This document shows positions 132-14,893 of a DNA stretch of 64,000 nucleotides, piece after piece. A program made the position numbers and the translations under genes. Where the stretch lies: positions 124,001 through 188,000 of the IMG/VR virus record IMGVR_UViG_3300032053_000002. One strand, written 5' to 3'. The notes under the pieces were generated by a model. That model was given only the letters and a program-made list of their open reading frames with translations. It ran no database searches and had not been told where the DNA came from. The number at the start of each line of letters is the position of its first letter. The stretch's first letter is position 1.

Positions 132-743
132 TTATAAGTTAATTTTTTTTATAGTGACATTGATTACAGGTGTTTGACGTAATAGCATATGATGATACTT
201 ATTCAGTGAGTCAATAGAGTTTTGTGTTAGTGTATCATCACTGATAAGTTTGTCGCGGATTTTTAGTATACTTTCCAATATATGAGGGCGAGTCCGTGAT
301 ATGTCGACCGTAGCCGCTACGGTCGCGACGTTTTTATAACCGCTATCTATATTCTTGTATAATTTTTCTATCTTAGCTAATAGATATATTTTCTTTATAT
401 AGCGAGTCGCCGCGGGGTGTTCCTTAATTATATGTTTAGTGAAATTGGGTCTATCGAAAAAGAATACAGTTTCCACATTTTCAATCAGCTTGAAATACTT
501 GGGATCATCTTTAAGGATGCCGCCGTTCGCAATACGATATATTTCTTCATGAGTACCTGTTAACTTTATTCTACTCGCCCCTTCTTTAATCTCGGCGACG
601 GTATTAAATACTTTCAGATTTTTCGGGAATGGAACTTCATATGATTCACCGACGTTAAAATGCGGTTCCCCATCTGAAATCTCTATCATTCCCACCGTAG
701 TAAAACGATAGCCGCTATCATTTATAAACTTATATGCCTTCAT
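132..743 (-). CDS. Hypothetical protein with the shared helical 'L..KL..L...LT...LN' module
   Basis: 203-aa ORF overlapping the next gene; LAKIEKLY...LTQNSIDSLNKYH. Confidence 0.75.
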   Translation of the reverse strand: MKAYKFINDSGYRFTTVGMIEISDGEPHFNVGESYEVPFPKNLKVFNTVAEIKEGASRIKLTGTHEEIYRIANGGILKDDPKYFKLIENVETVFFFDRPNFTKHIIKEHPAATRYIKKIYLLAKIEKLYKNIDSGYKNVATVAATVDISRTRPHILESILKIRDKLISDDTLTQNSIDSLNKYHHMLLRQTPVINVTIKKINL

Positions 744-1167
744 TGTTATACTTTCTATTTATCTTGTTCAACTTTTTAACTTCGTCGCCAGTCAATCTAG
801 ACCGATTAAACTTGGTGCCTTGTATTGTACCAGGCGCCAATAAGTCACGCGACGCAGGAGTTTTGCCAGCAGTAGAGAGAACTATAAATCTCGCTATAAT
901 TTCACCCACATAATCATGCGCCATCTTTGATCCAGGTCTGGTTGTATCATTCATACGTCCCAATGTAGCGTACAGTTTCAGTAATCTCCGATAGATATTA
1001 TACCCTTTATACAAACTTATAAACAGCTGCTTAGCAGTAGTTAAATTCCGCGATGCATAGGTTTTTGGTATATCTTTTAATGTTAGTTCCGATTCCACCA
1101 ATGAATATGTCGCCAGTACTTCACCGTTTTCCACGTACAGGTATTTAATCCATTTTCCAGGTAACAT
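730..1167 (-). CDS. Hypothetical protein, paralog of 12306-12731 and 12728-13219
   Basis: LYKGYNIYRRLLKL...RLTGDEVKKLNKINR matches LYKGTTIWRRLKEL...RLTDEEVKMLNKINR. Confidence 0.8.
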   Translation of the reverse strand: MLPGKWIKYLYVENGEVLATYSLVESELTLKDIPKTYASRNLTTAKQLFISLYKGYNIYRRLLKLYATLGRMNDTTRPGSKMAHDYVGEIIARFIVLSTAGKTPASRDLLAPGTIQGTKFNRSRLTGDEVKKLNKINRKYNNEGI

Positions 1168-1172
1168 ATTCC

Positions 1173-3425
1173 TTAATTCCTTTTAATCGTCGAGAACAAA
1201 GAATTCAACTCTTTAGCAAGCGGAACCAGTTGATCAACCCTGATGAAGCGACTATCCTTACCGTACATTTCGCGGAAAGTTACAGCGGAACTAGACGTGG
1301 TATCTACGCGATCACTTACGAAAAAGGACATAACCCGAATACCGTTTGCTCTCATTTTATCTACGGCTTCTTTTGTCAGAGTTTCAATATCCTTAATCCC
1401 ATTATAGCTGTTAGGTTCACCGTCGCTGATGTTGATGAAGTACGATACTTTTCCGACACTACTATTAAGTATTTCTTTCATCGTCGCCTCGAAACACAAT
1501 CCTTCGGGAGTACCACCAGTGGAACACATCATAGAGAAGTATTTACGAAACTTACCGAAACTGTCTTTGCGACTATCATACGCAAGCAGAACCGTCGGCG
1601 CTTGCATACCATTAGTAACGTAGTAATCCCACCGAAGAGAAATCATAACTTTTAAGTTATTCACCTGAGTAGCAGCGTAGGCTAAAGCCGACACCATAGT
1701 CATCGTCCTATTCCACTTATCACCCCCCATAGACGATGACGCGTCAATACTAATATGTAGCATCGCTTCACCGAAAGTGTCCTTAGTAACCTGTGAAAAG
1801 ACAGATTCCAAATCATATCCCAGTCCGTGAAGTAACCGTTTTTCCAGATGGCCGGTTTGTTTACGAATAAGTTTAGTAACCTTTGTCTCGTTACGAATCT
1901 GTAAGCGATTCGCCAACATCTTGCCTAACCGAATTCCGAGATTGACATACGTTTCAGACGGCTTACGATTGGAGTTATGAAATAAACTATCGCGCATCAA
2001 ATGCATCGACTCGTCGTTCAGTTCGCGAATGACAACTACTTGTACACCTTCTTTACTTTCACCATGACTGTCAGATTCAGTACCGGTAGCGCCATCACCA
2101 ACTTTAGTTTTTTTCCCACCAACGTTCTCAACCGTCGTACCGGACGCATCCATTGCGTTAATTATTTCGTGCTCGTCTTTAGTGATAGCACCTTTCTTTA
2201 CTTTTCCATTTACCAGTTCTTTTATTTCTTCAATAGCCTTTTTCAACTGTTTTTTCTGTTCTTTTGTCAGTTCATCTCCAGATTGTGGCGTTCCGTCTCC
2301 GACATTAACCATATCACCGTCTTGCAACTTATCTATTGGGTTATCGTGTTTCGAATCACCGTCATCTTTTTTATCACCGTCTTTGCTGTCGCCAGAGTCT
2401 TTGTCTTTTTTATCACTACCGTCAGAGTCTTTATCTTTTTTATCACTGTCGCCAGAACCGCCACCACTATCACCAGATTCTTCTCCACCATCACCGCTAT
2501 CGCCAGATTCTTTTTCATCACCACTATCTTTTGTCTGCGACTCATCACCGGTTTCCGTAGGTTTATTTAACGGATGGTCAACCGGAAGCGGGTCAATGTT
2601 TTCTAACACAACCGTAAAAATCTTTTCGGCGACTATACGAGAATCGGACGTACTTTCCAGGCGGTCGATATTGTCAATATCAAATATGTTACTGATTTTA
2701 TCTAAACCAGGAAGTGCATTCAGGTCAATGTTACTTTTATCAGACGCCAGACCGTAGAAGCGAAAATGATAACTTTCAAGATTTCTCTCGCGATAGTAAC
2801 TTGATTTCAATCCAAGAGCAACTATTTTCGCGTTCCAATATCTATTATACAACGATGTATAATATGGTCTATAACCGATAACTTTGTCCATCATAATACG
2901 GTCAATGCGACGATCTTCAATAAAGTTCCAGTAGTCAAAGAACAACTTTTCCAACTCTTCTTTATTGGTTATGTTTTTTGTAGCGGCTAAAGCCGTGATT
3001 GATGGGGTTACATTTATAGTTCCAGTTTTAAGAAACTCACTGTACAATATGTGACTGGACTCGTGGAGTGCTAACCCGACAACCGTATCAAAATCTTTGT
3101 TAGTAACGTTAGCACTAATAAAGACATTTTTACTGTCGGTCATACTATGATCTTGAACGTTAAACAATACTTTGATTTTTTTGTCGCGAGTCGCGATGTG
3201 GACAAACCTGGCGACCGCTCTGCGAATAGACGACATTTCGATAAGCGATTTCTTATCTTTTTCTTCTGGGATAGCACGTAGCCAGTAACGAGAATACAGA
3301 TTGGCGGTAGAGTAATCTTCATCTTCCCGAAAACCAAATCGCGTCTTGAAGAAATCTTTCGCCATTTCCTTATCGTATGCTTCGTCGGCTTTATTTTTGC
3401 CACCGAATAAGTTTTTTATACTCAA
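1173..3425 (-). CDS. vWA-domain protein with N-terminal HExxH metallopeptidase-like domain (CobT-like partner of MoxR ATPase)
   Basis: HESSH (aa121-125) followed by IEDRRID; D/G/S/K-rich linker; C-terminal MIDAS motifs IDASSSM, GGTPEG, ISDGEP. Confidence 0.85.
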   Translation of the reverse strand: MSIKNLFGGKNKADEAYDKEMAKDFFKTRFGFREDEDYSTANLYSRYWLRAIPEEKDKKSLIEMSSIRRAVARFVHIATRDKKIKVLFNVQDHSMTDSKNVFISANVTNKDFDTVVGLALHESSHILYSEFLKTGTINVTPSITALAATKNITNKEELEKLFFDYWNFIEDRRIDRIMMDKVIGYRPYYTSLYNRYWNAKIVALGLKSSYYRERNLESYHFRFYGLASDKSNIDLNALPGLDKISNIFDIDNIDRLESTSDSRIVAEKIFTVVLENIDPLPVDHPLNKPTETGDESQTKDSGDEKESGDSGDGGEESGDSGGGSGDSDKKDKDSDGSDKKDKDSGDSKDGDKKDDGDSKHDNPIDKLQDGDMVNVGDGTPQSGDELTKEQKKQLKKAIEEIKELVNGKVKKGAITKDEHEIINAMDASGTTVENVGGKKTKVGDGATGTESDSHGESKEGVQVVVIRELNDESMHLMRDSLFHNSNRKPSETYVNLGIRLGKMLANRLQIRNETKVTKLIRKQTGHLEKRLLHGLGYDLESVFSQVTKDTFGEAMLHISIDASSSMGGDKWNRTMTMVSALAYAATQVNNLKVMISLRWDYYVTNGMQAPTVLLAYDSRKDSFGKFRKYFSMMCSTGGTPEGLCFEATMKEILNSSVGKVSYFINISDGEPNSYNGIKDIETLTKEAVDKMRANGIRVMSFFVSDRVDTTSSSAVTFREMYGKDSRFIRVDQLVPLAKELNSLFSTIKRN

Positions 3426-3455
3426 TCTATCTTTCCTTCTTTAATTGTATACCTA

Positions 3456-3527
3456 AATATACCACCCCCCGGCGTATCAGTCAACTGTTATTTTAACTAT
3501 TTTTTTAACCATATGAATTATTTCACA
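3456..3527 (-). promoter_or_regulatory. Sigma70-type promoter P1 with UP element and palindromic box
   Basis: TTGACT (3484-3479)-17 bp-TATATT (3461-3456); box TATGAA-TTAT-TTCACA at 3512-3527. Confidence 0.8.
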
Positions 3528-3540
3528 TGACCGTTCCTGG

Positions 3541-3584
3541 AAAAAAAGAAATACCCCCTGCACATAATGTATAGGGGGTATTTC
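3541..3584 (-). terminator. Intrinsic terminator after the AAA+ ATPase gene
   Basis: GAAATACCCCCT / AGGGGGTATTTC 12-bp stem followed by T7 on the minus strand. Confidence 0.85.
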
Positions 3585-3603
3585 GCCTTCTTAGGGAAGG
3601 ATT

Positions 3604-4911
3604 TTACATTAAGTCATCTTGATGAAACAGGTCGCCAGATCCAGCCACGACCGGTTCAACTTCTTCTTTTTCCTTTTTCTCTTTTTTCGGCTCTTTGACT
3701 ACATCTTTTTCGAACAGCGGCTCGGCGTCGAGGTTACTATATTGCTGAATGAACTGCAACAGATGTGTTCTTTCGGAATCGGCACCACCTTCACCGGAAA
3801 ACATATTCACCACACTGGCTTCCATCACTTCACTGAAAGTAAACCCATCGTTCAACATGCTAACCTGCGCGACAGTGGAGCGGATAGAAATCATGGTAGT
3901 CAGGGTTGGCGCTTCACTGGTAGCCTCTTTACGAGTATACCCGGCAACAGCAACAATACCCTTAATAAGTTTCTGGTTAATTTCAGGATATAAAAGTTTT
4001 AACAACTTGAATTCTTCGGCTTCAGTAGGAATATCCATTTCAATCATGACCGGAAAACGGTCTTTCGTAGCACGATCAATGATACGAGTAGCGGTGTATT
4101 CACCACCGACGTTAGCGGTCGTAAAGAACGTTACTCCAGGAGCGACATTGATTACAGGTGTTTTCGGGTCTTCATCCAACCGCACATAACGCTGATCCGG
4201 ATCGAGAATCGTCATAAGGATATTTTCAGCATCAGGATTGGCACGAGTTATTTCGTCCAAGAGAATTACAGCACCCGGTGTCGTAATGGCTTTGATAAAC
4301 TCAGACTTGACGAAGTAAGTACCGGTTTCCTTATTGAAGTGTGTGTTACCGATTAAAGTAGCACGAGCGTCCTGTGTAGCCCCAAGATTAAACTTGAAGA
4401 ACGGGCGACCCAGAACTTTACCGATAGTGCGACCGGTAAGTGTTTTACCGAATCCACTATAACCCGTAAAGATGATATTCTGGCCACGAAGAGCAGAGTG
4501 CACCGCATACTTCCATTTCAGTTCAGCCAATATGAGGGTCTTCGGTTTCAGTGAGATTGCGTTCTTGATAGCAGTACGTACATCTTCATCAGATGGGGTT
4601 ACGTATCCTGTATATTCAGATGGAGTAGTCGCCTCGACTGTGGGGTTGGCGACAACCGAAGTAGGCATAAGTGTAGAACCGTTACTATATTCATAGTCAA
4701 CGGGAACTTCATCGGCTTTCAAACGACGCCAGAAAACATTACCGGCCTTCGATACCACTTTTCCTAAGTAGATACCGTGGTCAGCCGCATGGCGACGAGC
4801 GCCGTAAGGTATTGGTTCGCTATACATCTTCTCCGTCTTGATTTCAATCGGGTTCAGATGAGAACCATCGCGAACGACTTTAACGATTACTAAAAATTTT
4901 GGTGATTTCAT
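3604..4911 (-). CDS. MoxR/CbbQ/CobS-type AAA+ ATPase
   Basis: Walker A GYSGFGKT, Walker B LLDEITRA, LIG..HF pre-sensor insert, TANVG sensor I, DRF arginine finger; adjacent vWA gene. Confidence 0.9.
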   Translation of the reverse strand: MKSPKFLVIVKVVRDGSHLNPIEIKTEKMYSEPIPYGARRHAADHGIYLGKVVSKAGNVFWRRLKADEVPVDYEYSNGSTLMPTSVVANPTVEATTPSEYTGYVTPSDEDVRTAIKNAISLKPKTLILAELKWKYAVHSALRGQNIIFTGYSGFGKTLTGRTIGKVLGRPFFKFNLGATQDARATLIGNTHFNKETGTYFVKSEFIKAITTPGAVILLDEITRANPDAENILMTILDPDQRYVRLDEDPKTPVINVAPGVTFFTTANVGGEYTATRIIDRATKDRFPVMIEMDIPTEAEEFKLLKLLYPEINQKLIKGIVAVAGYTRKEATSEAPTLTTMISIRSTVAQVSMLNDGFTFSEVMEASVVNMFSGEGGADSERTHLLQFIQQYSNLDAEPLFEKDVVKEPKKEKKEKEEVEPVVAGSGDLFHQDDLM

Positions 4912-4944
4912 GTAACTTTATTCCTTCCCTAAATTGTATACTTA

Positions 4945-5016
4945 AATATACCAAATCCCGGCTTACTAGTCAACTGCTATTTTAACTATTTTTTCAGCCT
5001 TGTGAATTATTTCACT
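4945..5016 (-). promoter_or_regulatory. Sigma70-type promoter P2 with UP element and palindromic box
   Basis: TTGACT (4973-4968)-17-TATATT (4950-4945); TGTGAA-TTAT-TTCACT at 5001-5016. Confidence 0.8.
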
Positions 5017-5296
5017 TGACCTTTTTCTTAGCGAATTCTGAAAACGTATCACTCTTTCGAGCGACAGTCGCTACTTTCATTAACCGCTTACCGAACACCC
5101 GATCACAATCTTTGTCAGCAAGAGTTTTCTCTATTCTTTGCTGAACTTTCGCCACAAGCGCCGGGTGGATGTTAAAAGACGTAACCTTATATCCCCATTC
5201 CCGAACTTCAAACTTGAATATGCCCACCTTTTTAGGCATTCGTTTCAGTATCGTTAAAGTCAGACGATTATCCTGTTCCTTAAATATCGCTTTCAT
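5012..5296 (-). CDS. Hypothetical basic protein
   Basis: 94-aa ORF tightly tiled with its neighbours. Confidence 0.7.
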   Translation of the reverse strand: MKAIFKEQDNRLTLTILKRMPKKVGIFKFEVREWGYKVTSFNIHPALVAKVQQRIEKTLADKDCDRVFGKRLMKVATVARKSDTFSEFAKKKVK

Positions 5297-5503
5297 TTAT
5301 AGCGCTCCCATTCTTTTTAATTTGTTAATTGCGGTATGCAGTTCGTGGCAAAGATATTTATGCGCAACAAACTTTTCAACATCCTCTTCTTTTCGAGCAC
5401 GGTGAACTATCGTATAGCGTTTGGATTCCTTAACCCACCCAAATACCAGCCATTCGCGATGCCCCCTCAATGTCTTAAATAATCTTGGTCTTCCCGATTT
5501 CAT
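5297..5503 (-). CDS. Hypothetical protein
   Basis: 68-aa ORF, stop/start coupled with neighbours. Confidence 0.65.
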   Translation of the reverse strand: MKSGRPRLFKTLRGHREWLVFGWVKESKRYTIVHRARKEEDVEKFVAHKYLCHELHTAINKLKRMGAL

Positions 5504-5952
5504 TATACTTGTTCCTTGTTATATTTCATGTATATTTTATTTAATTTTGTCGCCACCTTTTCACCTATCGGAATCTTCTCATCGGATGAAATGGCTCTTA
5601 ATACGGTTAGTATCAACATGCACGACTCTACCTCGTCACGATCTTCCCCCACAGCAATTAACTGTAATTTTTTCAGCTTCTCATATAGTATCGTAAAATC
5701 TTTTAATTCCACGACTTTCGCTTTGTAAATGTATAAAATTTCGCCTCTTTTGTATTTATCTACTTTCGGCGTATTATTAGGATCAGAATGTCGTATATCA
5801 AATACCATACTAAAAGTACCGCTGGCATTCCCATACAAATCGACTGTGCCCGACCAGGGTTCGGCAGGTTCTATCAAAGAACCACCTAACCCCTGCTTCT
5901 CGTACCCGTCTTTTTTATCGAATTCTATTATCTTGTATACCATATCAATCAT
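5503..5952 (-). CDS. Hypothetical protein with the shared helical module
   Basis: LYEKLKKL...VATKLNKIYMKY at the C-terminus. Confidence 0.7.
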   Translation of the reverse strand: MIDMVYKIIEFDKKDGYEKQGLGGSLIEPAEPWSGTVDLYGNASGTFSMVFDIRHSDPNNTPKVDKYKRGEILYIYKAKVVELKDFTILYEKLKKLQLIAVGEDRDEVESCMLILTVLRAISSDEKIPIGEKVATKLNKIYMKYNKEQV

Positions 5953-6202
5953 TTATCAGTAAAAGTTTCATCCCATCGATGGAAACATATCTCCAGCCAT
6001 GCGTTTCTCCTTCACCATCTTTGTCGGCTCCAGAAAATATAAAGGTTCGTTTTTCTCCAGTACTCTCGTTCAACACAGTAACACAATTGTATAAGTGATG
6101 GTTTTTCACACGACCACTCAAATCACTCCATTCCCATGCCAGTGTCCGGGTTTTCTTATCCCACCCATTTTTCATCAGTTGGTTATTTACAGTGATTATC
6201 AT
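5945..6202 (-). CDS. Hypothetical protein
   Basis: 85-aa ORF overlapping the next gene by 8 bp. Confidence 0.7.
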   Translation of the reverse strand: MIITVNNQLMKNGWDKKTRTLAWEWSDLSGRVKNHHLYNCVTVLNESTGEKRTFIFSGADKDGEGETHGWRYVSIDGMKLLLIND

Positions 6203-6203
6203 A

Positions 6204-6344
6204 TTATTTGATCCTCTTTGATGTTAAAAAACTGTAGATGACGTACATAACTGCGGCGAATGCGAACAGCATCGGTTCCGTTATCAGTAAGTAAGTCAGT
6301 ATCGCGACAACAAATATCGTTTCAAATGTCGCCTTCAATATCAT
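6204..6344 (-). CDS. Small membrane protein (46 aa, not in ORF track)
   Basis: Manual translation MILKATFETIFVVAILTYLLITEPMLFAFAAVMYVIYSFLTSKRIK; first gene after promoter P3. Confidence 0.6.
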   Translation of the reverse strand: MILKATFETIFVVAILTYLLITEPMLFAFAAVMYVIYSFLTSKRIK

Positions 6345-6374
6345 TTTTTTATTCACTTTACTTTTCATATTCAT

Positions 6375-6445
6375 ATATTACATCTTTCCGAATTATCAGT
6401 CAAATTATATTTTAACTATTTTTATTCTTTGTGAAAAATTTCACT
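6375..6445 (-). promoter_or_regulatory. Sigma70-type promoter P3 with palindromic box
   Basis: TTGACT (6403-6398)-17-TAATAT (6380-6375); TGTGAA-AAAT-TTCACT at 6430-6445. Confidence 0.75.
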
Positions 6446-6469
6446 TTATTTGTGTCCTATTTTTTAATT

Positions 6470-6781: not shown

Positions 6782-6783
6782 TA

Positions 6784-7450: not shown

Positions 7451-7634
7451 AATATACAATTCCTCAGTATAACAGTCAAATTATTTTTTAACTATTCTTA
7501 CAGAGTGTGAAATTATTCACAAGATCGTCGCCGTGACTGGCGACTTGCCATCCCGAGCCTTGTGAAGTTTTTCACAAAGTAGCGGCTCAGCTTGACGCGA
7601 GCAAGCGGCCGGCCGCGTTGTGAAATTTTTCACA
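7451..7634 (-). promoter_or_regulatory. Sigma70-type promoter P4 with three palindromic boxes
   Basis: TTGACT (7479-7474)-17-TATATT (7456-7451); boxes at 7506-7521, 7561-7576, 7619-7634 (last two are perfect TTGTGAA-N4-TTCACAA). Confidence 0.85.
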
Positions 7635-8000: not shown

Positions 8001-8006
8001 TATACT

Positions 8007-8035
8007 AATATACAACTTCTTGGCGAGAAAGTCAA
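8007..8035 (-). promoter_or_regulatory. Sigma70-type promoter P5
   Basis: TTGACT (8035-8030)-17-TATATT (8012-8007) with the same UP element TAGTTAAAATAACAG. Confidence 0.8.
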
Positions 8036-8043
8036 CTGTTATT

Positions 8044-8223: not shown

Positions 8224-8249
8224 ATCTTATCCTTATTTTTAAGTCTTAG

Positions 8250-8474: not shown

Positions 8475-8504
8475 ATATTGTTTCCTTTTTTTATATTTTA
8501 ATCT

Positions 8505-8580
8505 TGGGGTGCACGGTGAGATTCGAACTCACGCTCCGCGGGTCACAGCCGCGTAATGCTACCGCTACATCACGCGCACC
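8505..8580 (-). tRNA. tRNA-His (GUG)
   Basis: Cloverleaf: G-1, acceptor GTGCGCG/CGTGCAC, anticodon arm CGCGG-CT GTG AC-CCGCG, TTCGAAT loop, C73 and encoded CCA. Confidence 0.95.
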
Positions 8581-8587
8581 ATATATT

Positions 8588-8770
8588 TTATCCTGAGAAA
8601 GCTTTTTCCAATGTTATTCGTTGCAACACTTCCCAGTATAACTTCGGCATTGCCTTCTTATCGATCATTTCCGATATATTCCGAGCCGATCCGAATTCGT
8701 CTTCAAAAGCCTGTTCGGACTTCTCAATGTACTTTTTTACTTCTTTTAAAAACGTCATGTTACTCTTCAC
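8588..8770 (-). CDS. Hypothetical protein
   Basis: GTG start at 8770 behind AAGGAG, downstream of promoter P6; the track start at 8809 overlaps the promoter. Confidence 0.65.
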   Translation of the reverse strand: MKSNMTFLKEVKKYIEKSEQAFEDEFGSARNISEMIDKKAMPKLYWEVLQRITLEKAFSG

Positions 8771-8799
8771 GGCGAAACTCTCCTTAATTTTTATACTAT

Positions 8800-8828
8800 A
8801 ATATAACACCTATCAGCTTACCAGTCAA
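8800..8828 (-). promoter_or_regulatory. Sigma70-type promoter P6
   Basis: TTGACT (8828-8823)-17-TATATT (8805-8800). Confidence 0.8.
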
Positions 8829-8837
8829 CTGCTATTT

Positions 8838-9275
8838 TTACTTATTTTTTGCGTATGCATTTAGTGCCCATCTCCACATTTCGTTTAAAAACCCAACGTC
8901 TTTTATACTGAGTTTGCGGGTTTTTAAAAATTCTTTATAAAATAACGTTATTTCCGTTGCTGATTCGGTACACCCGACATTCTTTAAACTACTAATTAAA
9001 AGCTCAATTTTTTCGCTGATTCTTTTTATTTTCTCTTCGGGCGACTCTACTCTTTCTAGTACGAAAAATGGAAAATTATATCCGCTATCAAGATGAATTC
9101 CTTTACTTCCGCTACAAATAAACGTTATGTCGCCCTCTTCACCGACATATTTGTCCATCATAGAAGTCCAAGTATTATCCCATCCATTTTCATGATTATG
9201 AGCAATCATTACAACTTTTACTCTGTCGCCAACTTTGAATCCGGCAGCTTTTTGTTTGATTTCGTATTCACTCAT
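8838..9275 (-). CDS. Hypothetical protein, SH3/KOW-like N-terminus plus helical module; paralog of 9272-9706
   Basis: FKVGDRVKV...W.NTW...M.K.VG; EKIKRISEKIELLISSL...LSIKDVGFLN. Confidence 0.8.
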   Translation of the reverse strand: MSEYEIKQKAAGFKVGDRVKVVMIAHNHENGWDNTWTSMMDKYVGEEGDITFICSGSKGIHLDSGYNFPFFVLERVESPEEKIKRISEKIELLISSLKNVGCTESATEITLFYKEFLKTRKLSIKDVGFLNEMWRWALNAYAKNK

Positions 9276-9706
9276 TTTTTAATATACGCTTTCCATATTG
9301 CATTTAAATACTCAACATCGTCTATACTGAATTTATGACTTTTTTTAAATCGCGCGTACATTTTATACACTTCGTTAGCAACACGTTTGCATCCGTTATT
9401 CTGTAAACCACTAATTAAACGCTCAAACTTTTCACTTACTCTCTTTATTTTCTCATCGGACGACTTCACTTTTTTCAGTACGGAAGGTGGGAATCTGTAT
9501 GTCGGGCCTTTACGGGGAATACTTTCTAAACGAATTCCTGCGGTCTTATGAATATCGGATATAACCATTATTTTGCCAACACTTTTATTCATCTCAAGTA
9601 CCCATGTATTCCGCCACTCACTCGTGTAGCTCTCAGCAATACCGGTAACTTTTACTTTGTCGCCGATTTTGAACTGGGTGGGGGTTCTCTTTTTTCCTGG
9701 CGACAT
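9272..9706 (-). CDS. Hypothetical protein, tandem paralog of 8838-9275
   Basis: FKIGDKVKV...WRNTW..EMNKSVG; EKIKRVSEKFERLISGL...FSIDDVEYLN. Confidence 0.8.
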   Translation of the reverse strand: MSPGKKRTPTQFKIGDKVKVTGIAESYTSEWRNTWVLEMNKSVGKIMVISDIHKTAGIRLESIPRKGPTYRFPPSVLKKVKSSDEKIKRVSEKFERLISGLQNNGCKRVANEVYKMYARFKKSHKFSIDDVEYLNAIWKAYIKK

Positions 9707-9708
9707 CT

Positions 9709-10263
9709 CTACACACTCTCCAAATATGCGTGATTTAACCCGCCTTTTTTATTACTGTATATAGACACTTCTGCATCAAGTTCACTGGGAGTATTACTTA
9801 CCCAACCGAAGAACTTCTTTCTACAATCACTGTGACGACAGAAGTCAACTTGCGGACCGTCAACCGGTTTACCACAGTAGTGGCAATACCTTTCTTCACG
9901 AAACATTTCTGTTTTCGGAAGTAAACGTTTCCATAGGGAAATATCCTTCCGCTTATACGTTTTCTTCACCACTGCGGGACTTCCAAATATAACTTCACCA
10001 TGCAACTTAGCGAGATAAGGTCTTATCCATTTTACCGAGTATTCCACCACGGCGACTCGCTTATAAGTGTATTTATAATCGAACAACTTATCCATAGCGT
10101 CTTGCTGTTTTCTAATCAACTCCAGCATACCTGAATCATCTTTCACAGTAACGGTAATCCCCAGCTCACTATTCTTGAAAACTAGGAAGGTACGCCCGAC
10201 TTTATACGCAAAAGATACTTTCGCGTCTCCGTATGTCTCGTAAAACTTTTTTTCGTTCATCAT
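9709..10263 (-). CDS. Hypothetical protein with C-terminal zinc finger
   Basis: CHYC...CRHSDC; first gene after promoter P7. Confidence 0.7.
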   Translation of the reverse strand: MMNEKKFYETYGDAKVSFAYKVGRTFLVFKNSELGITVTVKDDSGMLELIRKQQDAMDKLFDYKYTYKRVAVVEYSVKWIRPYLAKLHGEVIFGSPAVVKKTYKRKDISLWKRLLPKTEMFREERYCHYCGKPVDGPQVDFCRHSDCRKKFFGWVSNTPSELDAEVSIYSNKKGGLNHAYLESV

Positions 10264-10285
10264 TATTCTTTTCTCCTATACCTAA

Positions 10286-10388
10286 AATATACCACTTCTC
10301 AGCGTATCAGTCAAGAACTATTTTCGCTATAGCGGCATTCCGGACGGCAATGCGGTCGTAACTAGAGCCCTTCGTGAACTTTTTCACA
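10286..10388 (-). promoter_or_regulatory. Sigma70-type promoter P7 with palindromic box
   Basis: TTGACT (10314-10309)-17-TATATT (10291-10286); CGTGAA-CTTT-TTCACA at 10373-10388. Confidence 0.75.
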
Positions 10389-10421
10389 TACGGTCTGTAC
10401 GTTTTCTGTAAGTGGTTTTTC

Positions 10422-10493
10422 AATCCGCTCGCTCCTCTCGGTTGCAATCCGCTCGCTCCTCTCGGTTGTCAATTCGCTCGCTCCTCTCGGTTG
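10422..10493. repeat. Three tandem copies of a 23-bp core AAT(C/T)CGCTCGCTCCTCTCGGTTG
   Basis: Copies at 10422, 10446 and 10471 (periods 24 and 25 bp), no spacers. Confidence 0.9.
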
Positions 10494-10586
10494 TAGGGGG
10501 CAACTCGGTAGACGTGTCAGGCGAGTTCAGAACCGTGCATGCAAATAGGCAGCCTGAAGTGTGTTCGTCGTGTGGGGGGGTTCTTG

Positions 10587-10658
10587 GCGGGAGTTTGTGG
10601 TTTGTGCGGGAGTTCTTGCGAGAGTTTGCGCGGGAGTTCTTGCGGGAGTTTGCGCGAG
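10587..10658. repeat. G-rich GCGGGAGTT repeats (24-bp unit x2 plus partials)
   Basis: GCGGGAGTTCTTGCG(A/G)GAGTTTGC at 10606-10629 and 10630-10653. Confidence 0.85.
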
Positions 10659-10833
10659 GAATCGTGGAGAAGTGGGGGCATGGGGGTGGCGGTGCTTCCG
10701 ACGAGTAGCAATTGCGCATCGGCAATACCTGCGACCCACTATTATAATATTATCCGAATATCAAAAAGGCGTGGATTATTTATTTATAATAGGGAAGTGA
10801 TTATCAATTCCAGCAAGTTGTATCAAATAGGCG

Positions 10834-10913
10834 AGTGATATGCAGCGATATGCAGTGATATGCAGCGATATGCAGTGATATGCAGTGATATGCAGTGATA
10901 TGCAGCGATATGC
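10834..10913. repeat. 10-bp tandem repeat TGCAG(C/T)GATA, 7 full copies plus partial flanks
   Basis: Full copies 10841-10910 read directly. Confidence 0.95.
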
Positions 10914-10929
10914 GCTGTAATATATATGG

Positions 10930-11688
10930 CTAATAACGTTGTATAAAAGCGAGTTCCGATTTAAGATTAGAAAGAAAGAAATGTTCATCAGTAGTTCTAT
11001 CGAATACTATTGTAGCATCGTGTATAGTAGGTTGATCATAAATTAGTTTCGGATCTATATTATTTTTAGAATAGTCGCCGATTAGTTGTTTGGCCAGAAC
11101 ATTTAATGTTTGTAAATCATCTTTTTTTAAAGATGGTCGCAGTAACAAATGGTCTACAAATATAAATCGTAATCTTGCCTGAAAGCGTTCTTCTGATATT
11201 AAATACTCAAATATTCTCTCATATTTCGAAGTATCATTTTCCCATAATGCATAGGATTCGCGAAGAATATGTCTCAATTTGTTTAATATCGTATAGTATT
11301 TATTTATGTAATATTTTTCGCCGAGGTGATTCGTATGATATTTACTTCTCCAGAATTCAAGCCGGGTTGAAACACTAACATCTTTACTAAGAAGGCTTTG
11401 CAGATGATTAATAGAAAAAAATGTTTCACTTTGATTGAGTAACTTGCGAACTTCATTAAAATCATAGCTTTCGCCTTCTTGCGAAGTTTGGGCAGATTTA
11501 TTTAGACACTTAGATACGATTTGGTGCTCTATTATTTTATAGTGCGAAAAATCTTTATCATACATTAAAACACCGCCGATTGGCAGCGCTTCTGCATAAA
11601 ACACATAAGAGCGAATATGTATTTTGTTGTCTTTATAAAAAGATTTTAAGTTGATAGCGTGAACAGGTACTATATTTGTATTAGACAT
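10930..11688 (-). CDS. Hypothetical protein, paralog of 14192-14893
   Basis: VPVHAINLK / LPVHVINLR; YYTILNKLRHIL / YFRILNKLKYLY. Confidence 0.75.
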   Translation of the reverse strand: MSNTNIVPVHAINLKSFYKDNKIHIRSYVFYAEALPIGGVLMYDKDFSHYKIIEHQIVSKCLNKSAQTSQEGESYDFNEVRKLLNQSETFFSINHLQSLLSKDVSVSTRLEFWRSKYHTNHLGEKYYINKYYTILNKLRHILRESYALWENDTSKYERIFEYLISEERFQARLRFIFVDHLLLRPSLKKDDLQTLNVLAKQLIGDYSKNNIDPKLIYDQPTIHDATIVFDRTTDEHFFLSNLKSELAFIQRY

Positions 11689-11694
11689 AACTAT

Positions 11695-11943
11695 TTATTT
11701 CGCCAACCAGGCCCAATATTTTGGAGTTCCGTAAGCACCTATTGACAAACCGTTGCACCATATGGTGCAACGGTTACCGTTGTACCATTGTAAAGGATTT
11801 AGTTCGTCTTTCCATGGCGAAAATGATACGGCTCTATTGTGGTTGAACCATACCAGAATAGCACTATTATAATCAACCGTATTAACGTCTGGCGGGTCGC
11901 CTTCAATCCACTCCAAATCAAGCGGTGATTTTGTTATTTTCAT
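11695..11943 (-). CDS. Hypothetical Trp-rich protein
   Basis: 82-aa ORF in the tiled operon. Confidence 0.65.
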   Translation of the reverse strand: MKITKSPLDLEWIEGDPPDVNTVDYNSAILVWFNHNRAVSFSPWKDELNPLQWYNGNRCTIWCNGLSIGAYGTPKYWAWLAK

Positions 11944-11952
11944 AAGTCGTTC

Positions 11953-12309
11953 CTATTTTTCTTTTATTGTAAACGTGCTGTCAGTAGGTTGAGTAATGAT
12001 GTAGTGATTGTCCCCTATTACTACTGGGATTTCGCGTGGTTTGGATCTAAATTGATTACTTTTCAATATACGAGAAATTTCCATTAACTTGCGCCTTGGT
12101 TCATCATACTTTCGGAATATTATAAACTTTTCTTTTTGAAAGTTGATTTCGTCGATAACCGCAAACAACGAATCACCAATCTCTTTTGAAAAACTATTTT
12201 TTTCGGAGAGTATCTTAAAAATAACCGTCAACTCTTCGGTTGGTTCTATATCACAACCGAGCGACATTAAAAATATAGAACATAATAATAATAACATTAA
12301 ATTTTTCAT
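11953..12309 (-). CDS. Putative lipoprotein
   Basis: MKNLMLLLLCSIFLMSLGC signal peptide with lipobox-like SLGC. Confidence 0.6.
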   Translation of the reverse strand: MKNLMLLLLCSIFLMSLGCDIEPTEELTVIFKILSEKNSFSKEIGDSLFAVIDEINFQKEKFIIFRKYDEPRRKLMEISRILKSNQFRSKPREIPVVIGDNHYIITQPTDSTFTIKEK

Positions 12310-12731
12310 TTTTTAACTCCAATTATTTTTGCTATTTTATTTAATCTTAACACATCATATTCGGTAAGGCGAGTACCCGAAAGATGAGTCCAATTTTCAT
12401 TGGCTCCGTAACTCTCAACAAACTTTTCTACTAAACGATTAACATAAATTCGATCTCCCCACGCCTTTTGTTTGGAGTATGATAAATATATCCCATCGTT
12501 TATAAACCTATTAAGTTTATTCGATAATATTTTTAATCGTCGCCAGATAGTTAAACCCTTGTATAAACCGTCTATTTTCTTCTTTGCCTCGTCAACCGTC
12601 ATTATATCATAATAGTTGGCCGGAACTTCAAGTATAACCATAATCTGAGAATCGGGTTTCCATTCGGCTATTGCGGGTACGCGACGATCTTCATAACAAA
12701 AATTTCCAACCCACGTCAAAACATCATTCAT
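12306..12731 (-). CDS. Hypothetical protein, LYKG..IWRRL family
   Basis: L.WV...CYE; LYKGLTIWRRL; RLTEYDVLRLNKI. Confidence 0.8.
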   Translation of the reverse strand: MNDVLTWVGNFCYEDRRVPAIAEWKPDSQIMVILEVPANYYDIMTVDEAKKKIDGLYKGLTIWRRLKILSNKLNRFINDGIYLSYSKQKAWGDRIYVNRLVEKFVESYGANENWTHLSGTRLTEYDVLRLNKIAKIIGVKK

Positions 12732-13219
12732 CTATTCTTATTTCCTTCAACGCACCTATTTATTTTATTTAGCATTTTTACTTCTTCGTCAGTTAGTCTC
12801 GACTCAAATCGCGGTATAACTTTTATGCTTCCAGGAACTTCGGCGGACTCTAGATAAGTAACAAATTTGCCAATTAGCCCATTAACATACCTTTCGTATT
12901 CTTCCAATACCAGAGACATTTTGGCGTAAGAAGATGGATAGTCTTTGTATTTAACCACCAGAGTTTTTTCCAGTTCAATAATTTTAAGTAGTAATTCTTT
13001 TAATCTTCGCCAGATGGTTGTGCCCTTATACAGGTCGTTCATCGCAACTTTTGCTACATCGAGGCTTAGGCAATCATGGTATACGTGCGGAACTTCGTGT
13101 AATATTAAAGATTTTTCTTCTGCGTTATAAGTCGCTATCTTATTAGAAGACCCGGTTTTCACGTCGCCTTCGTAACATTCATCATCAACCCATTGTAAAG
13201 TATTTTTTATTGCGTTCAT
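12728..13219 (-). CDS. Hypothetical protein, LYKG..IWRRL family
   Basis: LQWVDDECYE; LYKGTTIWRRL; RLTDEEVKMLNKINR. Confidence 0.8.
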   Translation of the reverse strand: MNAIKNTLQWVDDECYEGDVKTGSSNKIATYNAEEKSLILHEVPHVYHDCLSLDVAKVAMNDLYKGTTIWRRLKELLLKIIELEKTLVVKYKDYPSSYAKMSLVLEEYERYVNGLIGKFVTYLESAEVPGSIKVIPRFESRLTDEEVKMLNKINRCVEGNKNR

Positions 13220-13395
13220 AACTTACTCTCGATACGTTTTTCCATTACTTTGCATTTTCTGCATAAGCATCCAATCACTAAATTAAGATATTTTTTTCGC
13301 CAACGAGATTCTCTCGTTTTTAAAAACTCGTTTTCTTCTGTTAATTCAAGTATTCTCGCCTTCAATTGGGCGACCTCTTTCATATGTTTGCTCAT
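13216..13395 (-). CDS. Small coiled-coil protein with CxCxxC (59 aa, not in ORF track)
   Basis: Manual translation MSKHMKEVAQLKARILELTEENEFLK...GCLCRKCKV...; 4-bp overlaps with both neighbours. Confidence 0.65.
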   Translation of the reverse strand: MSKHMKEVAQLKARILELTEENEFLKTRESRWRKKYLNLVIGCLCRKCKVMEKRIESKL

Positions 13396-14180
13396 AATCT
13401 TTCAATCTTTTTACCGTATTTGGACAAGTAAATACCCACACATCCGATACAGCTACTTTCCGTGTTGTTAGGTATCGTGATGGCGATTCGCATACACTCT
13501 TCACTACAAAAACCGGCAGTTATAGTTTTGCCTTTTTCTAAATAACAACTACCTTTAATATGTTCGTAATGCAGGTGTCCGGTAAATGTTCGTGCCTTTT
13601 TACCGCAAATTATACACCTATCAACGTGCCAATGGATATGGTTTTTTGCGATATTGTTCATGGCATCTACCATACCAGGAGTAAACCGGTCATTATTTTT
13701 AACCTGCCGCATCACTGCTAAAACCCTTGATCTCGCACTTTCATCATCAACATTTTTCAGAATACTTTTTAGTTTTTTTAAGAGTCTCTCTTTTTTATGC
13801 GGTATAACATAATCATCATATAATTCGGCTAATATTTTATATTTGCCATTAAAAACGGGGCATAATCTACCCGCGAAGTTATTATACGCAAAAATATAGT
13901 CATCTCCGTTACGATGTATGAAATACGAACTCGGGGTTAAGAAAAATAATCCAAACGAAGCCACTCCGCGTCCGGTCTTGGAAAAAACTACATTCAATAA
14001 TTTGGATTTTTTTACTATTTCGCGAACATTTTTATATCTTCTAAAGTTTTCCGGAAGTGGTACGAGCGACATTATTTCCGGGATGCCGGTAATTTCTATC
14101 ATATTTTTATATAATAAATGTCCACCGTCCCCATCATAAATTTCTATGTCAGGAGTTTCATATTTATTTGCAACTAACAT
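13392..14180 (-). CDS. Hypothetical protein with helical module and C-terminal Cys-rich domain
   Basis: LLKKLKSIL...FTPGMVDAMNNIAK; CIIC, CSEEC, CIGC. Confidence 0.75.
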   Translation of the reverse strand: MLVANKYETPDIEIYDGDGGHLLYKNMIEITGIPEIMSLVPLPENFRRYKNVREIVKKSKLLNVVFSKTGRGVASFGLFFLTPSSYFIHRNGDDYIFAYNNFAGRLCPVFNGKYKILAELYDDYVIPHKKERLLKKLKSILKNVDDESARSRVLAVMRQVKNNDRFTPGMVDAMNNIAKNHIHWHVDRCIICGKKARTFTGHLHYEHIKGSCYLEKGKTITAGFCSEECMRIAITIPNNTESSCIGCVGIYLSKYGKKIERL

Positions 14181-14191
14181 AACTTTTATTC

Positions 14192-14893
14192 CTATACATG
14201 ACGCAAATATGGTTTGTCTTTACCGGGTGCAATATCCAATACCGTACCAGACGTGTCAAACAAATAATAATCATTTCCATTGTAACAATTGACTTCTTGA
14301 TAAACTTCGGTGGCGGTCATAAAATCCGAGTAAGAAATGATTTTATTTTTAATCAACCCGTCCGATATTTTGTTTAAAGTTTCAATCGACACAAAATTTT
14401 TAAAACTCTCTATTAGTAAAGTGTGTATTAACGTGCCTTTTATTATATCATAAATATTTTTATTAACAATAGTTGGAAATTTTTTAGTCATATGAAGATA
14501 CAGGTATTTTAGTTTATTTAGTATCCTGAAATATTTTGCAGACTCCAGGTCATGCATTTGCTTAAAATAATCCCAATCGAGAACCACGTTGATATTGTCA
14601 TAATGAATTGATGGGCGAAATTCGGAATCTATATAATTATAAATTTTCGTTATCGCTTCGCCTTGAGGAAACGATGCTAATATTCCTTCAGTCTTAGATT
14701 CTTTTATAATTTTGTTCTGAGTTTTACTTATCAAAAATGCTTTAACTGAAAATCTTGTTGGTGGTCTGTATTTTTTTGTGTCAGATACTTGCGAATAAAT
14801 AACAATAGATTTGACATAGATTCTCGCTCGTGACATATTTTCTCTTAAATTTATAACGTGAACTGGTAAATACCTATCCAGTGATGAAGCCAT
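14192..14893 (-). CDS. Hypothetical protein, paralog of 10930-11688
   Basis: Shared N-terminal PVH.INL and ILNKL..L motifs. Confidence 0.75.
   Translation of the reverse strand: MASSLDRYLPVHVINLRENMSRARIYVKSIVIYSQVSDTKKYRPPTRFSVKAFLISKTQNKIIKESKTEGILASFPQGEAITKIYNYIDSEFRPSIHYDNINVVLDWDYFKQMHDLESAKYFRILNKLKYLYLHMTKKFPTIVNKNIYDIIKGTLIHTLLIESFKNFVSIETLNKISDGLIKNKIISYSDFMTATEVYQEVNCYNGNDYYLFDTSGTVLDIAPGKDKPYLRHV

What the first reader, a model, noticed from the sequence alone, without database searches (positions are those of the whole stretch)
132..14893. Expanded family of about 10 proteins sharing one helical module attached to different N-terminal domains
Seen: a module of the form (I/L)xxKLxxL...(L/F)(T/S)xxx(V/I)xxLNxI recurs in ORFs 132, 730, 5503, 8838, 9272, 10930, 12306, 12728, 13392 and 14192. 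Examples are RLTGDEVKKLNKINR, RLTDEEVKMLNKINR, LSIKDVGFLNEMW, FSIDDVEYLNAIW, LKKDDLQTLNVLAK, FTPGMVDAMNNIAK and LTQNSIDSLNKYH. The attached domains differ (SH3/KOW-like, L.WV..CYE, PVH.INL, C-terminal Cys-rich). Inference: a common docking or adaptor domain that delivers variable effector domains to one target (a host complex, a phage scaffold, or the neighbouring AAA+/vWA machine). I do not recognise this family.
Basis: partly seen in the sequence, partly recalled or inferred. Interest (0 to 1): 0.65.

Follow-up and report, generated by a model that had tools for sequence, protein, structure and literature searches.

The report
Shuffled three-helix module family in jumbo phage
A 293-kb phage carries at least 22 small early-region genes that share one roughly 60-75-residue three-helix domain joined to at least seven unrelated partner domains; the domain matches no described family and its function is untested.

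Summary
The window belongs to a 292,723-bp, T4-like jumbo phage record. A 60-75-residue antiparallel three-helix bundle recurs in at least 22 proteins of this genome. Its last helix carries h-[TS]-x-x-[DE]-h-x-x-L-N-x-h-[YW]-x-K-[YH] with an invariant Asn.

- Five are solid: 730, 12306, 12728, 8838, 9272.
- Two are probable, through a bridging paralog: 132, 13392.
- One is borderline: 5503.
- Two are unsupported: 10930, 14192.

Profiles built with each family left out recover the left-out members at E of 1e-5 to 1e-8, against decoy maxima of 9-16 bits. One module subtype sits behind three different N-domains (SH3-like, WGR-like, and the N-domain of the 132/13392 family), so the domains are shuffled.

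Conservation is at protein level. The genes lie in operons behind a repeated sigma-70-type promoter. Pfam, PHROGs, PDB, BFVD and the ESM Atlas give no match. The 11-member family A has no relative among 1.84 billion representative proteins. The module does have distant kin in a widespread family of about 130-residue marine-phage hypothetical proteins.

The docking/adaptor function is plausible but untested. Linkage to the AAA+/"vWA" pair is not supported.

The parts
730..1167 (-). ORF 730 (145 aa). Family A: N-terminal beta-sheet domain plus the module (module = 733-1026).
   Evidence: Iterated HMM family of 11. Recovered by a profile built without family A at E 2.2e-5.
12306..12731 (-). ORF 12306 (141 aa). 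Family A (module = 12309-12578).
   Evidence: BLASTP to ORF 12728 at 1e-14; family HMM.
12728..13219 (-). ORF 12728 (163 aa). Family A (module = 12731-13045). This is the modelled member.
   Evidence: AlphaFold2 gives pLDDT 84.7 and pTM 0.72. The model has a five-strand sheet, helices 53-90 and 95-119, a hairpin, and helix 144-161. Residues 62-163 form a generic antiparallel three-helix bundle.
8838..9275 (-). ORF 8838 (145 aa). SH3-like N-domain plus the module (8841-9044).
   Evidence: BLASTP to ORF 9272 at 2e-31. The module alone matches g121797 at 2.8e-4. dN/dS against a metagenomic ortholog is 0.63.
9272..9706 (-). ORF 9272 (144 aa). SH3-like N-domain plus the module (9275-9463).
   Evidence: Recovered by a profile built without the SH3 pair at E 3.4e-5. 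The N-domain matches PHROG 7488 at 9.6e-5 and Pfam SH3_15 at 0.0086.
132..743 (-). ORF 132 (203 aa). C-type N-domain plus the module (174-398) plus a roughly 20-residue tail.
   Evidence: The N-domain is homologous to the 13392/g116806 family (hhalign E 3.2e-5, 120 columns). It aligns collinearly with P0019. Leave-family-out E is 3.9e-3.
13392..14180 (-). ORF 13392 (262 aa). C-type N-domain, an internal module (13626-13799), then a Cys-rich FCS/TRASH-like tail.
   Evidence: Paralog of g116806. The C-family module profile matches the non-C module profile at E 1.7e-4. Leave-out E is only 0.34. Weak zf-FCS/DUF7576 hits.
5503..5952 (-). ORF 5503 (149 aa). Borderline carrier (candidate module 5506-5706). 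Its last helix closely matches the family A consensus.
   Evidence: hhalign of the family A profile gives E 1.7e-3 over 58 columns, third-best non-A hit among the 261 ORFs compared. Leave-one-out HMM gives E 0.89.
10930..11688 (-). ORF 10930 (252 aa). Membership not supported.
   Evidence: Not hit by the 20-sequence module profile at E<=1. hhalign E values are 0.12-0.5. Only the last helix aligns, at E 2.3e-3 with probability 12%.
14192..14893 (-). ORF 14192 (233 aa). Membership not supported. It is related to ORF 10930 only through a 27-residue N-terminal stretch.
   Evidence: BLASTP E 0.006 and hhalign E 1.4e-3 to ORF 10930. No module hit. Its LN motif is one residue out of register with the capping box (read directly from the sequence).
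3456..3484 (-). Conserved promoter TTGACT-N17-TATATT ahead of the 750-aa gene, ORF 730 and ORF 132.
   Evidence: There are 37 copies on the coding strand against 2 on the other strand, all intergenic.
10286..10314 (-). The same promoter ahead of ORF 9709-10263, ORF 9272 and ORF 8838.
3604..4911 (-). Context gene: MoxR/CobS-like AAA+ ATPase.
   Evidence: Pfam AAA_5 at 5e-13 and phrog_249 at 5e-29.
1173..3425 (-). This is unconfirmed.
   Evidence: The whole protein gives no Pfam hit and only one sub-threshold NCBIfam hit (exonuclease VII small subunit, E 0.059); its C-terminal 275 residues give no PDB sequence hit. A DxSxS-like stretch is visible by eye only.

Best explanation
What it is. This is a superfamily of small phage proteins built around one constant domain. 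The domain is an antiparallel three-helix bundle of about 60-75 residues.
- Helix 1 carries a basic residue followed by a near-invariant Leu.
- Helix 3 opens with a capping box and carries an invariant Asn, in the pattern L-N-x-h-[YW]-x-K-[YH].

How it arose. In this jumbo phage the domain has been duplicated and recombined onto at least seven different partner domains:
- the family A beta-sheet domain (11 copies, six of them in a tandem array);
- an SH3-like domain (2 copies);
- a WGR-like domain (1 copy);
- the 'C-type' domain (4 copies, one of which also has a Cys-rich zinc-finger-like tail);
- the unrelated N-terminal regions of g213525, g34115 and ORF 5503;
- in g114344 the module sits at the N-terminus.

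These points are shown. The genes also sit in operons behind a repeated sigma-70-type promoter, which suggests early transcription by host RNA polymerase.

What it probably does (inferred, about one chance in three). The bundle is the constant interaction or assembly surface, and the variable domains supply target recognition. On that reading the family is a set of host-takeover adaptors that converge on one partner. The partner is unknown.
For: - Motif enrichment: 14 hits against about 1-2 expected, and 13 near the C-terminus against 0.34 expected.
- Leave-family-out profiles recover g50468 at 9.7e-9, g213525 at 5.2e-8, g121797 at 8.3e-7, g214715 at 1.7e-7, ORF 730 at 2.2e-5 and ORF 9272 at 3.4e-5. 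Decoy maxima in those runs are 8.5-15.7 bits.
- Module-only phmmer links proteins with three different N-domains at 7.5e-5 to 6e-4.
- P0019, the intact ortholog of g121797, has the C-type N-domain (E 1e-7 to g116806) and the B-type module. It aligns collinearly with ORFs 132 and 13392.
- AlphaFold2 gives three helices in both a family A member and the WGR-like member, using independent alignments. Both match the same generic three-helix bundles, for example 9rgv_A at Z 6.8 and 6.7.
- Information content by codon position in the motif is 0.86 at position 2, 0.70 at position 1 and 0.54 at position 3. This is protein-level selection.
- The promoter TTGAC[TA]-N17-TATATT occurs 37 times on the coding strand and 2 times on the other.
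- There are distant relatives outside the genome. The marine 127-138-aa family matches the module profile by hhalign at probability 81%, E 1.3e-5. Raw HMM hits score 16-20 bits against a decoy maximum of 11.3.
Against: - No partner or activity was found.
- The conserved positions are mostly core hydrophobics, a generic helix capping box and one Asn. They may be fold determinants rather than a binding surface.
- The three-helix bundle is a generic fold, with best Z of only 6.8-7.3.
- Support for ORFs 132 and 13392 is indirect. ORF 5503 fails the leave-one-out test. ORFs 10930 and 14192 fail all tests.
- 'Early' timing rests on a consensus promoter match, not on expression data.
- The host is unknown.
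Confidence: 0.55

Rival explanations
1. The module is only a structural or self-association scaffold, a stable helical 'handle' or oligomerisation domain inherited by duplication. There is no common external target, and each paralog acts through its own variable domain.
For: - The conserved positions are largely core or capping residues (alignment A3).
- In the family A model the bundle packs against the N-domain as one unit (pTM 0.72).
- The fold is generic.
Against: - The Asn is invariant across 20 sequences that share only about 23% mean column identity.
- The aromatic-Lys-aromatic tail is conserved.
- The module is retained on at least seven unrelated partner domains.
Together these are more than a fold usually demands.
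- The homodimer prediction gave no verdict, so self-association is untested.
Confidence: 0.3
2. The module is a targeting signal that loads variable cargo proteins into the capsid or onto a virion scaffold for injection. The analogue is the capsid-targeting sequence of the T4 internal proteins.
For: - The architecture is a constant tag plus variable cargo.
- The family is expanded in a T4-like phage.
- dN/dS is high (0.63), as might be expected for injected counter-defence proteins.
Against: - The module is a folded domain of 60-75 residues, not a short cleavable peptide.
- It is internal in ORF 13392 and N-terminal in g114344.
- The genes sit behind sigma-70-type promoters, away from the structural genes that were identified.
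Confidence: 0.07
3. The similarity is chance or convergence: an amphipathic helix with a common capping box in an AT-rich, Lys/Asn-rich proteome.
For: - L-[TS]-x-x-[DE]-h is a generic helix N-cap with a hydrophobic staple (established knowledge).
- ORFs 10930, 14192 and 5503 score within decoy range.
Against: For the core set this is excluded by the leave-family-out E-values down to 1e-8, by the natural-protein background rate, by the consistently in-register best alignments, and by the bridging protein. It remains the likeliest reading only for ORFs 10930 and 14192.
Confidence: 0.05
4. The conserved 3' gene ends are a DNA or RNA element, such as a promoter for the next gene, rather than a protein motif.
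For: The K-Y-K-K codons are A/T-rich and resemble TATA-like boxes, and many carriers end just before the next gene.
Against: - Third codon positions are the least conserved.
- Synonymous Leu and Asn codons vary among copies.
- The repeated promoter lies in the intergenic spacers, not in the motif.
Confidence: 0.02

Closest known systems
Viral multigene families with a constant small helical docking domain and variable binding domains (poxvirus ankyrin/PRANC F-box-like proteins; cellular F-box, SOCS-box and BTB adaptors). Comparison from general knowledge.
   Same: A short helical constant domain, often C-terminal in the viral versions, is fused to diverse recognition domains and expanded to many copies within one viral genome.
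   Different: There is no sequence or fold match to F-box or related Pfam models. The hub partner is unknown. This is a bacteriophage, and the module is an up-down-up three-helix bundle with its own signature.
T4 internal proteins carrying the capsid-targeting sequence (from general knowledge).
   Same: A constant targeting element sits on variable, fast-evolving cargo in a T4-like phage.
   Different: The T4 sequence is an N-terminal peptide of about 10 residues that is removed by the prohead protease. Here the element is a folded 60-75-residue domain, mostly C-terminal, in genes behind sigma-70-type promoters.
Marine uncultured-phage hypothetical protein family of 127-138 aa (P0021-P0102; examples L041:7044-7427 and L045:4932-5327).
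   Same: It has the same last-helix signature (V-N-K-I-Y-K-K-H) and a profile-profile match over helices 2-3, or over the whole module: E 1.3e-5 against the 20-sequence module profile and 1.9e-4 against the B-type module profile.
   Different: Only one copy was found in each locus fragment examined, and the whole-record search of five such records detected nothing, not even that known copy. These proteins have no fused globular domains and carry an extra N-terminal helical region. They have no annotation or known function.
Generic antiparallel three-helix bundles in the PDB (designed bundle 9rgv_A, myosin VI lever-arm extension 2ld3, PezA C-domain 2p5t_A).
   Same: Same topology. Z is 6-7 with rmsd 2.7-3.5 Angstrom over 65-88 residues for both models.
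   Different: These scores are in the range expected for unrelated helical bundles. Sequence identity is 8-15%. No functional inference is possible.

Membership tests
Three-helix 'LN-helix' module family defined here (profile A3) | Significant match to a module profile built without the tested family | tested here: met
   ORF 730 at 2.2e-5 and ORF 9272 at 3.4e-5. ORFs 12306, 12728 and 8838 are joined through unambiguous paralogy (E 1e-14 and 2e-31). Outside the window: g50468, g213525, g121797 and g214715 at 1e-7 to 1e-9..
Three-helix 'LN-helix' module family defined here (ORFs 132 and 13392) | Significant match to a module profile built without the tested family | tested here: inconclusive
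   ORF 132 scores 3.9e-3 (rank 2) and ORF 13392 scores 0.34. Profile-profile comparison gives E 1.7e-4 over the last helix. Membership rests on the bridge protein P0019: its N-domain matches g116806 at E 1e-7, it carries the B-type module, and it aligns collinearly.
Three-helix 'LN-helix' module family defined here (ORF 5503) | Significant match to a module profile built without the tested protein | tested here: inconclusive
   hhalign gives E 1.7e-3 over 58 columns. Leave-one-out HMM gives E 0.89, rank 18.
Three-helix 'LN-helix' module family defined here (ORFs 10930 and 14192) | Any profile match above decoy level | tested here: not met
   There is no hit at E<=1 with the 20-sequence profile. 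Ranks are 19-74 in the hhalign scans. The best result is E 2.3e-3 at probability 12%, on one helix of ORF 10930.
Three-helix 'LN-helix' module family defined here | Predicted antiparallel three-helix bundle with the motif in helix 3 and an invariant Asn | tested here: met
   Models of ORF 12728 (pLDDT 84.7) and of g50468 (module pLDDT 73-90). Both match the same bundle templates. The Asn is invariant in 20 of 20 sequences.
Any described protein family (Pfam-A, PHROGs) | Score above the curated or significance threshold | tested here: not met
   None of the ten ORFs reaches a Pfam gathering score or a PHROGs E<1e-4 on the module. The only near-hit is PHROG 7488 on the SH3-like N-domain of ORF 9272.
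F-box / PRANC-type adaptor module | Match to F-box-type models and binding to a Skp1-like hub | tested here: not met
   There is no Pfam hit. Hub binding cannot be tested here. This is an analogy only.
WGR domain (N-domain of g50468, L007:1468-1983) | Pfam PF05406 at or above the gathering score | tested here: inconclusive
   E 2.5e-3 at 18.3 bits, against a cutoff of 22, covering the first half of the profile only. The N-domain model is of low confidence.
vWA domain (750-aa neighbour, window 1173-3425) | Match to vWA/CobT-type models | tested here: not met
   Pfam gives no hit. NCBIfam gives only a sub-threshold exonuclease VII small-subunit hit (E 0.059) and no vWA/CobT model. The C-terminal 275 residues give no significant PDB sequence hit. 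A MIDAS-like DxSxS stretch is seen by eye only.
MoxR/CobS-like AAA+ (window 3604-4911) | AAA_5 domain | tested here: met
   Pfam AAA_5 at 5.3e-13, above its cutoff. phrog_249 at 4.6e-29.

The most novel reading that the evidence does not exclude
The three-helix module is a phage-specific docking domain, functionally analogous to an F-box. Through it about twenty different recognition domains (SH3-like, WGR-like, zinc-finger-bearing and others) would be plugged into a single host or phage hub early in infection. Candidate hubs are a Clp-type or MoxR-type AAA+ machine; the phage also encodes a ClpS homolog beside the tandem array. That would be a combinatorial host-takeover adaptor system not described for bacteriophages.
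Probability: 0.2. Interest if true: 0.8.

Novelty: new variant of a known kind. Interest (0 to 1): 0.5.

Why it matters
Jumbo phages carry many lineage-specific paralog families of unknown role. In this one the family logic can be read directly: one constant small domain is recombined with many unrelated domains.

If the constant domain docks on a single hub, the family would give a direct way to find that hub. It would also reveal a set of host targets at once.

The module defines an undescribed domain family. The same family also occurs as a widespread single-domain gene in marine uncultured phages. A function found here would therefore annotate at least 83 sequence clusters of marine-phage hypothetical proteins.

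Tried and rejected
- Homodimer prediction for ORF 12728 (two copies, alignment A1) returned 'no answer' with a median score of 0.01. It is not evidence either way.
- Foldseek against the PDB and BFVD, the ESM Atlas feature and shape searches, and the wide VIA search gave only generic or insignificant matches. Weak SspB and RF-1-domain look-alikes for the family A N-domain (TM below 0.5) were not pursued.
- The search for related loci with alignment A1 failed because the alignment has no conserved 7-10-column stretch.
- The DNA polymerase pattern scan of viral contigs found nothing.
- Megablast of the first 15 kb of the window against phage records found nothing.
- The module profile found nothing in Microcystis phage Mel-JY01, the closest isolate at 44% PolB identity. 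In three 200-kb-class viral records it gave only one marginal hit.
- The whole-record search of the contigs that hold the weak external hits also found nothing, not even those known hits, so it is uninformative.
- A conserved AAA+-to-module gene order was considered and dropped. The loci had been fetched around the AAA+ gene, so proximity is built in. An independent contig shows DNA ligase, not the AAA+ gene, upstream.
- A DNA-level (promoter) origin of the motif was rejected by the codon-position analysis.
- The T4 late-promoter word TATAAATA shows no coding-strand enrichment.
- A paper search for Mel-JY01 returned nothing.
- One script was killed by the sandbox and rerun.
Full report
**Setting**

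The window is bases 124,001-188,000 of a 292,723-bp IMG/VR virus record estimated to be 91% complete. Nearly all genes lie on the minus strand: 207 of the 224 ORFs of 150 aa or more. The phage has a family B DNA polymerase (phrog_262), baseplate wedge proteins and a portal protein. Its closest isolate is Microcystis phage Mel-JY01, at 44% polymerase identity. It is therefore a distant, T4-like jumbo myovirus of unknown host. Megablast of the first 15 kb of the window found no near-identical phage record.

**The observation**

All ten ORFs and all quoted peptides are present.
- ORFs 8838 and 9272 at 2e-31.
- ORFs 12306, 12728 and 730 at 1e-14 to 8e-4.
- ORFs 10930 and 14192 over 27 N-terminal residues, at 0.006.
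- A 14-residue C-terminal match between ORFs 5503 and 730, at 0.06.

The motif itself is strongly enriched:
- The strict pattern occurs 14 times in 448 minus-strand ORFs. Composition-preserving shuffles give 0.96. The rate in 1,328 natural ORFs from other phage loci predicts 1.9.
- Thirteen of the 14 lie within 25 residues of the C-terminus, against 0.34 expected.

Within the motif, information content by codon position is 0.86 at position 2, 0.70 at position 1 and 0.54 at position 3. Leu and Asn codons vary among copies. The conservation is therefore on the protein, not on a DNA element.

**Size and structure of the family**

Iterated HMM searches within the genome give three starting families:
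- Family A (ORFs 730, 12306, 12728) has 11 members. Six form a tandem array at genome 117,482-120,448, just upstream of the window.
- The 8838/9272 group collects g121797 and g50468.
- ORF 13392 has a paralog, g116806.

ORF 132 shares its N-terminal 130 residues with 13392 and g116806 (hhalign E 3.2e-5). These three form the 'C family'.

The key point is that the 8838/9272 group is held together by the C-terminal module alone. Its members have three different N-domains:
- SH3-like in ORFs 8838 and 9272 (weak PHROG 7488 and Pfam SH3_15 hits).
- WGR-like in g50468 (Pfam WGR at E 2.5e-3, below the cutoff).
- The C-type domain in g121797.

The last assignment rests on P0019, an intact ortholog of g121797 from a metagenome. 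P0019 matches the g116806 N-domain at E 1e-7. It aligns end to end with ORF 132 and collinearly with all C-family members. Module-only phmmer queries link these three architectures at 7.5e-5 to 6e-4.

In this assembly g121797 is frameshifted at a poly-A run.

**Unbiased tests**

I aligned 20 module segments (A3). The Asn is invariant and a Leu in helix 1 is nearly so. I then rebuilt the profile with each family left out and scored the left-out members against the 448 ORFs, their reversed sequences and five sets of shuffles. Decoy maxima were 8.5-15.7 bits.

| Family left out | Left-out member | E-value |
|---|---|---|
| g50468 | g50468 | 9.7e-9 |
| g213525 | g213525 | 5.2e-8 |
| g121797 | g121797 | 8.3e-7 |
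| Family A | g214715 | 1.7e-7 |
| Family A | g118959 | 1.8e-5 |
| Family A | ORF 730 | 2.2e-5 |
| Family A | g117482 | 3e-5 |
| SH3 pair | ORF 9272 | 3.4e-5 |
| C family | ORF 132 | 3.9e-3 (rank 2) |
| C family | ORF 13392 | 0.34 |
| C family | g116806 | 5.3 |
| ORF 5503 | ORF 5503 | 0.89 |

Other tests agree with this picture:
- The C-family module profile matches the module profile that contains no C-family sequence at E 1.7e-4, over the last helix.
- In a scan of 261 ORFs with the C-family module profile, six of the ten best non-C hits are module carriers aligned in register.
- The full 20-sequence profile, run on the six-frame genome, adds g34115 (5.4e-5) and g114344 (8e-5, with the module at the N-terminus). 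It does not touch ORF 10930 or ORF 14192 at E<=1.

The verdict on the ten ORFs is:
- Solid: 730, 12306, 12728, 8838, 9272.
- Probable: 132, 13392.
- Borderline: 5503.
- Unsupported: 10930, 14192.

The genome holds at least 22 carriers. Sixteen of them lie between 114 and 138 kb.

**Structure**

AlphaFold2 on ORF 12728 with the family A alignment gives pLDDT 84.7 and pTM 0.72. The model has a five-stranded sheet, helices 53-90 and 95-119, a hairpin, and the motif helix 144-161.

A second model was made for g50468, with an alignment that contains no family A sequence. Its N-domain is poor, but three helices (106-125, 132-149, 154-167) are predicted at pLDDT 73-90.

Exhaustive structural alignment places both C-terminal regions on the same generic antiparallel three-helix bundles. 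Examples are 9rgv_A at Z 6.8 and 6.7, and 2ld3 at 6.6 and 6.4. Direct superposition of the two models was not possible with the tools.

There is no specific structural relative in the PDB, BFVD or the ESM Atlas. Family A inserts the hairpin between helices 2 and 3; the other families lack it.

The family-specific part is L-N-x-h-[YW]-x-K-[YH], together with the basic-Leu pair in helix 1.

**Distribution outside the genome**

- Family A is private to this phage. The word-indexed search and a full HMMER pass over 1.84 billion representative proteins return only this genome's own 11 proteins, plus one spurious hit to a repeat protein.
- The 8838/9272 group has only strain-level variants at 66-95% identity.
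- ORF 8838 and its 66%-identical ortholog give dN/dS of 0.63, with the motif retained. This indicates fast evolution.

The module profile does hit small ORFs in other uncultured phage contigs. L016:4123-4389 scores 20.0 bits, L029:11273-11530 scores 18.3 bits, and a 127-131-aa family scores 16-17 bits. Decoy maxima are 11.3 bits.

That 127-131-aa family comprises at least 83 sequence clusters from marine metagenomes, all unnamed. Its profile matches the module profile at probability 81%, E 1.3e-5. It matches the SH3/WGR-type module over all three helices at E 1.9e-4.

The domain is therefore older than this phage. What is special here is its expansion and its fusion to other domains.

**Context and function**

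A promoter-like site, TTGAC[TA]-N17-TATATT, occurs 37 times on the coding strand and twice on the other strand. Every copy is intergenic, and most lie 6-34 nt before a start codon. They are concentrated between 35 and 144 kb.

Copies directly precede:
- g34115, g50468 and g117916;
- the 750-aa gene, which is followed by ORFs 730 and 132;
- the AAA+ gene;
- ORF 9709-10263, which is followed by ORFs 9272 and 8838.

This suggests transcription by the host sigma-70 holoenzyme, that is, early genes. That is an inference.

The variable domains that can be named are binding-type domains: SH3-like, WGR-like and an FCS/TRASH-like zinc finger. A ClpS homolog lies next to the tandem array (Pfam E 4e-8, above its cutoff). 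The MoxR/CobS-like AAA+ gene lies 2.4 kb upstream of ORF 730.

I give it only about one chance in three. No partner was found, and the conserved residues could equally be fold determinants.

The specific AAA+/vWA suggestion is not supported:
- The 750-aa neighbour matches no vWA model in Pfam or NCBIfam, and its C-terminal 275 residues match no PDB sequence.
- In an independent marine contig the module-family gene lies downstream of a DNA ligase gene, with hsp20 downstream, and no AAA+ gene among the called genes of the 13.4-kb locus.
- The homodimer prediction gave no verdict.

**Novelty**

The phenomenon, a viral multigene family with a constant small domain and variable partners, is known from other viruses. 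The domain, its signature, its 22-fold expansion with domain shuffling in one phage, and its link to a widespread marine-phage family have no counterpart in the libraries searched. The function remains open.

Noticed in passing
L004:5759-6058 (-) = genome 115,759-116,058, about 8 kb upstream of the window: The phage encodes a ClpS (Clp protease adaptor) homolog of 99 aa. Pfam gives E 4.2e-8, above the gathering score. It lies about 750 bp downstream of g116806, which follows the family A tandem array.
   Followed up: partly
L004:1493-2995 (-) = genome 111,493-112,995: A 500-aa CckA-like hybrid histidine kinase is encoded by the phage. NCBIfam gives E 1.7e-107, below the equivalog cutoff, and phrog_5982 gives 9e-100.
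   Followed up: no
37 sites genome-wide; in the window at 3456-3484, 4945-4973, 7451-7479, 8007-8035, 8800-8828 and 10286-10314 (all on the minus strand): A near-invariant promoter-like site, TTGAC[TA]-N17-TATATT, occurs 37 times on the coding strand and 2 times on the other. Every copy is intergenic, and most lie 6-34 nt before a start codon. This is probably the phage's early promoter class.
   Followed up: partly
window 10264-10930: This is a non-coding, relatively GC-rich stretch with three tandem-repeat arrays: 24-25 bp x3 at 10420-10494, 24 bp x2.4 at 10600-10656, and 10/20 bp x8 at 10834-10913. It holds the only positive GC-skew bin in the window. It could be an origin or an iteron-like region.
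   Followed up: no
window 8505-8579 (-): A tRNA-His (GTG) gene sits among the small ORFs.
   Followed up: yes
L004:11797-12330 (-) = genome about 121,797-122,330: g121797 is split by a frameshift at a poly-A run in this assembly. The intact form (P0019, 170 aa) occurs in another metagenome. The cause could be a sequencing error, a pseudogene or slippage.
   Followed up: partly
L079:12826-16848 (-) = genome 260,826-264,848: The portal gene is 1,340 aa long and contains an HNH-endonuclease-like insert, which may be an intein or a homing element.
   Followed up: no
window 21704-23317, 53529-54836 and 60623-62134 (all on the minus strand): Auxiliary metabolic genes are present: a Nol-like carbamoyltransferase (1.8e-109), an aminotransferase (1.5e-46) and a glycosyltransferase (1.1e-20).
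   Followed up: no
window 9709-10263 (-): This 184-aa ORF is the first gene of the operon that continues with ORFs 9272 and 8838. It has a Cys-rich C-terminus (weak DUF7575 hit), reminiscent of the zinc-finger-like tail of ORF 13392.
   Followed up: no
L084:5031-5426 and L041:7044-7427 (other phages): The marine 127-138-aa module-family gene sits in a conserved block upstream of a 215-aa ORF and hsp20, in T4-like marine phage contigs. It has no match in the collection of GenBank phage records searched.
   Followed up: partly
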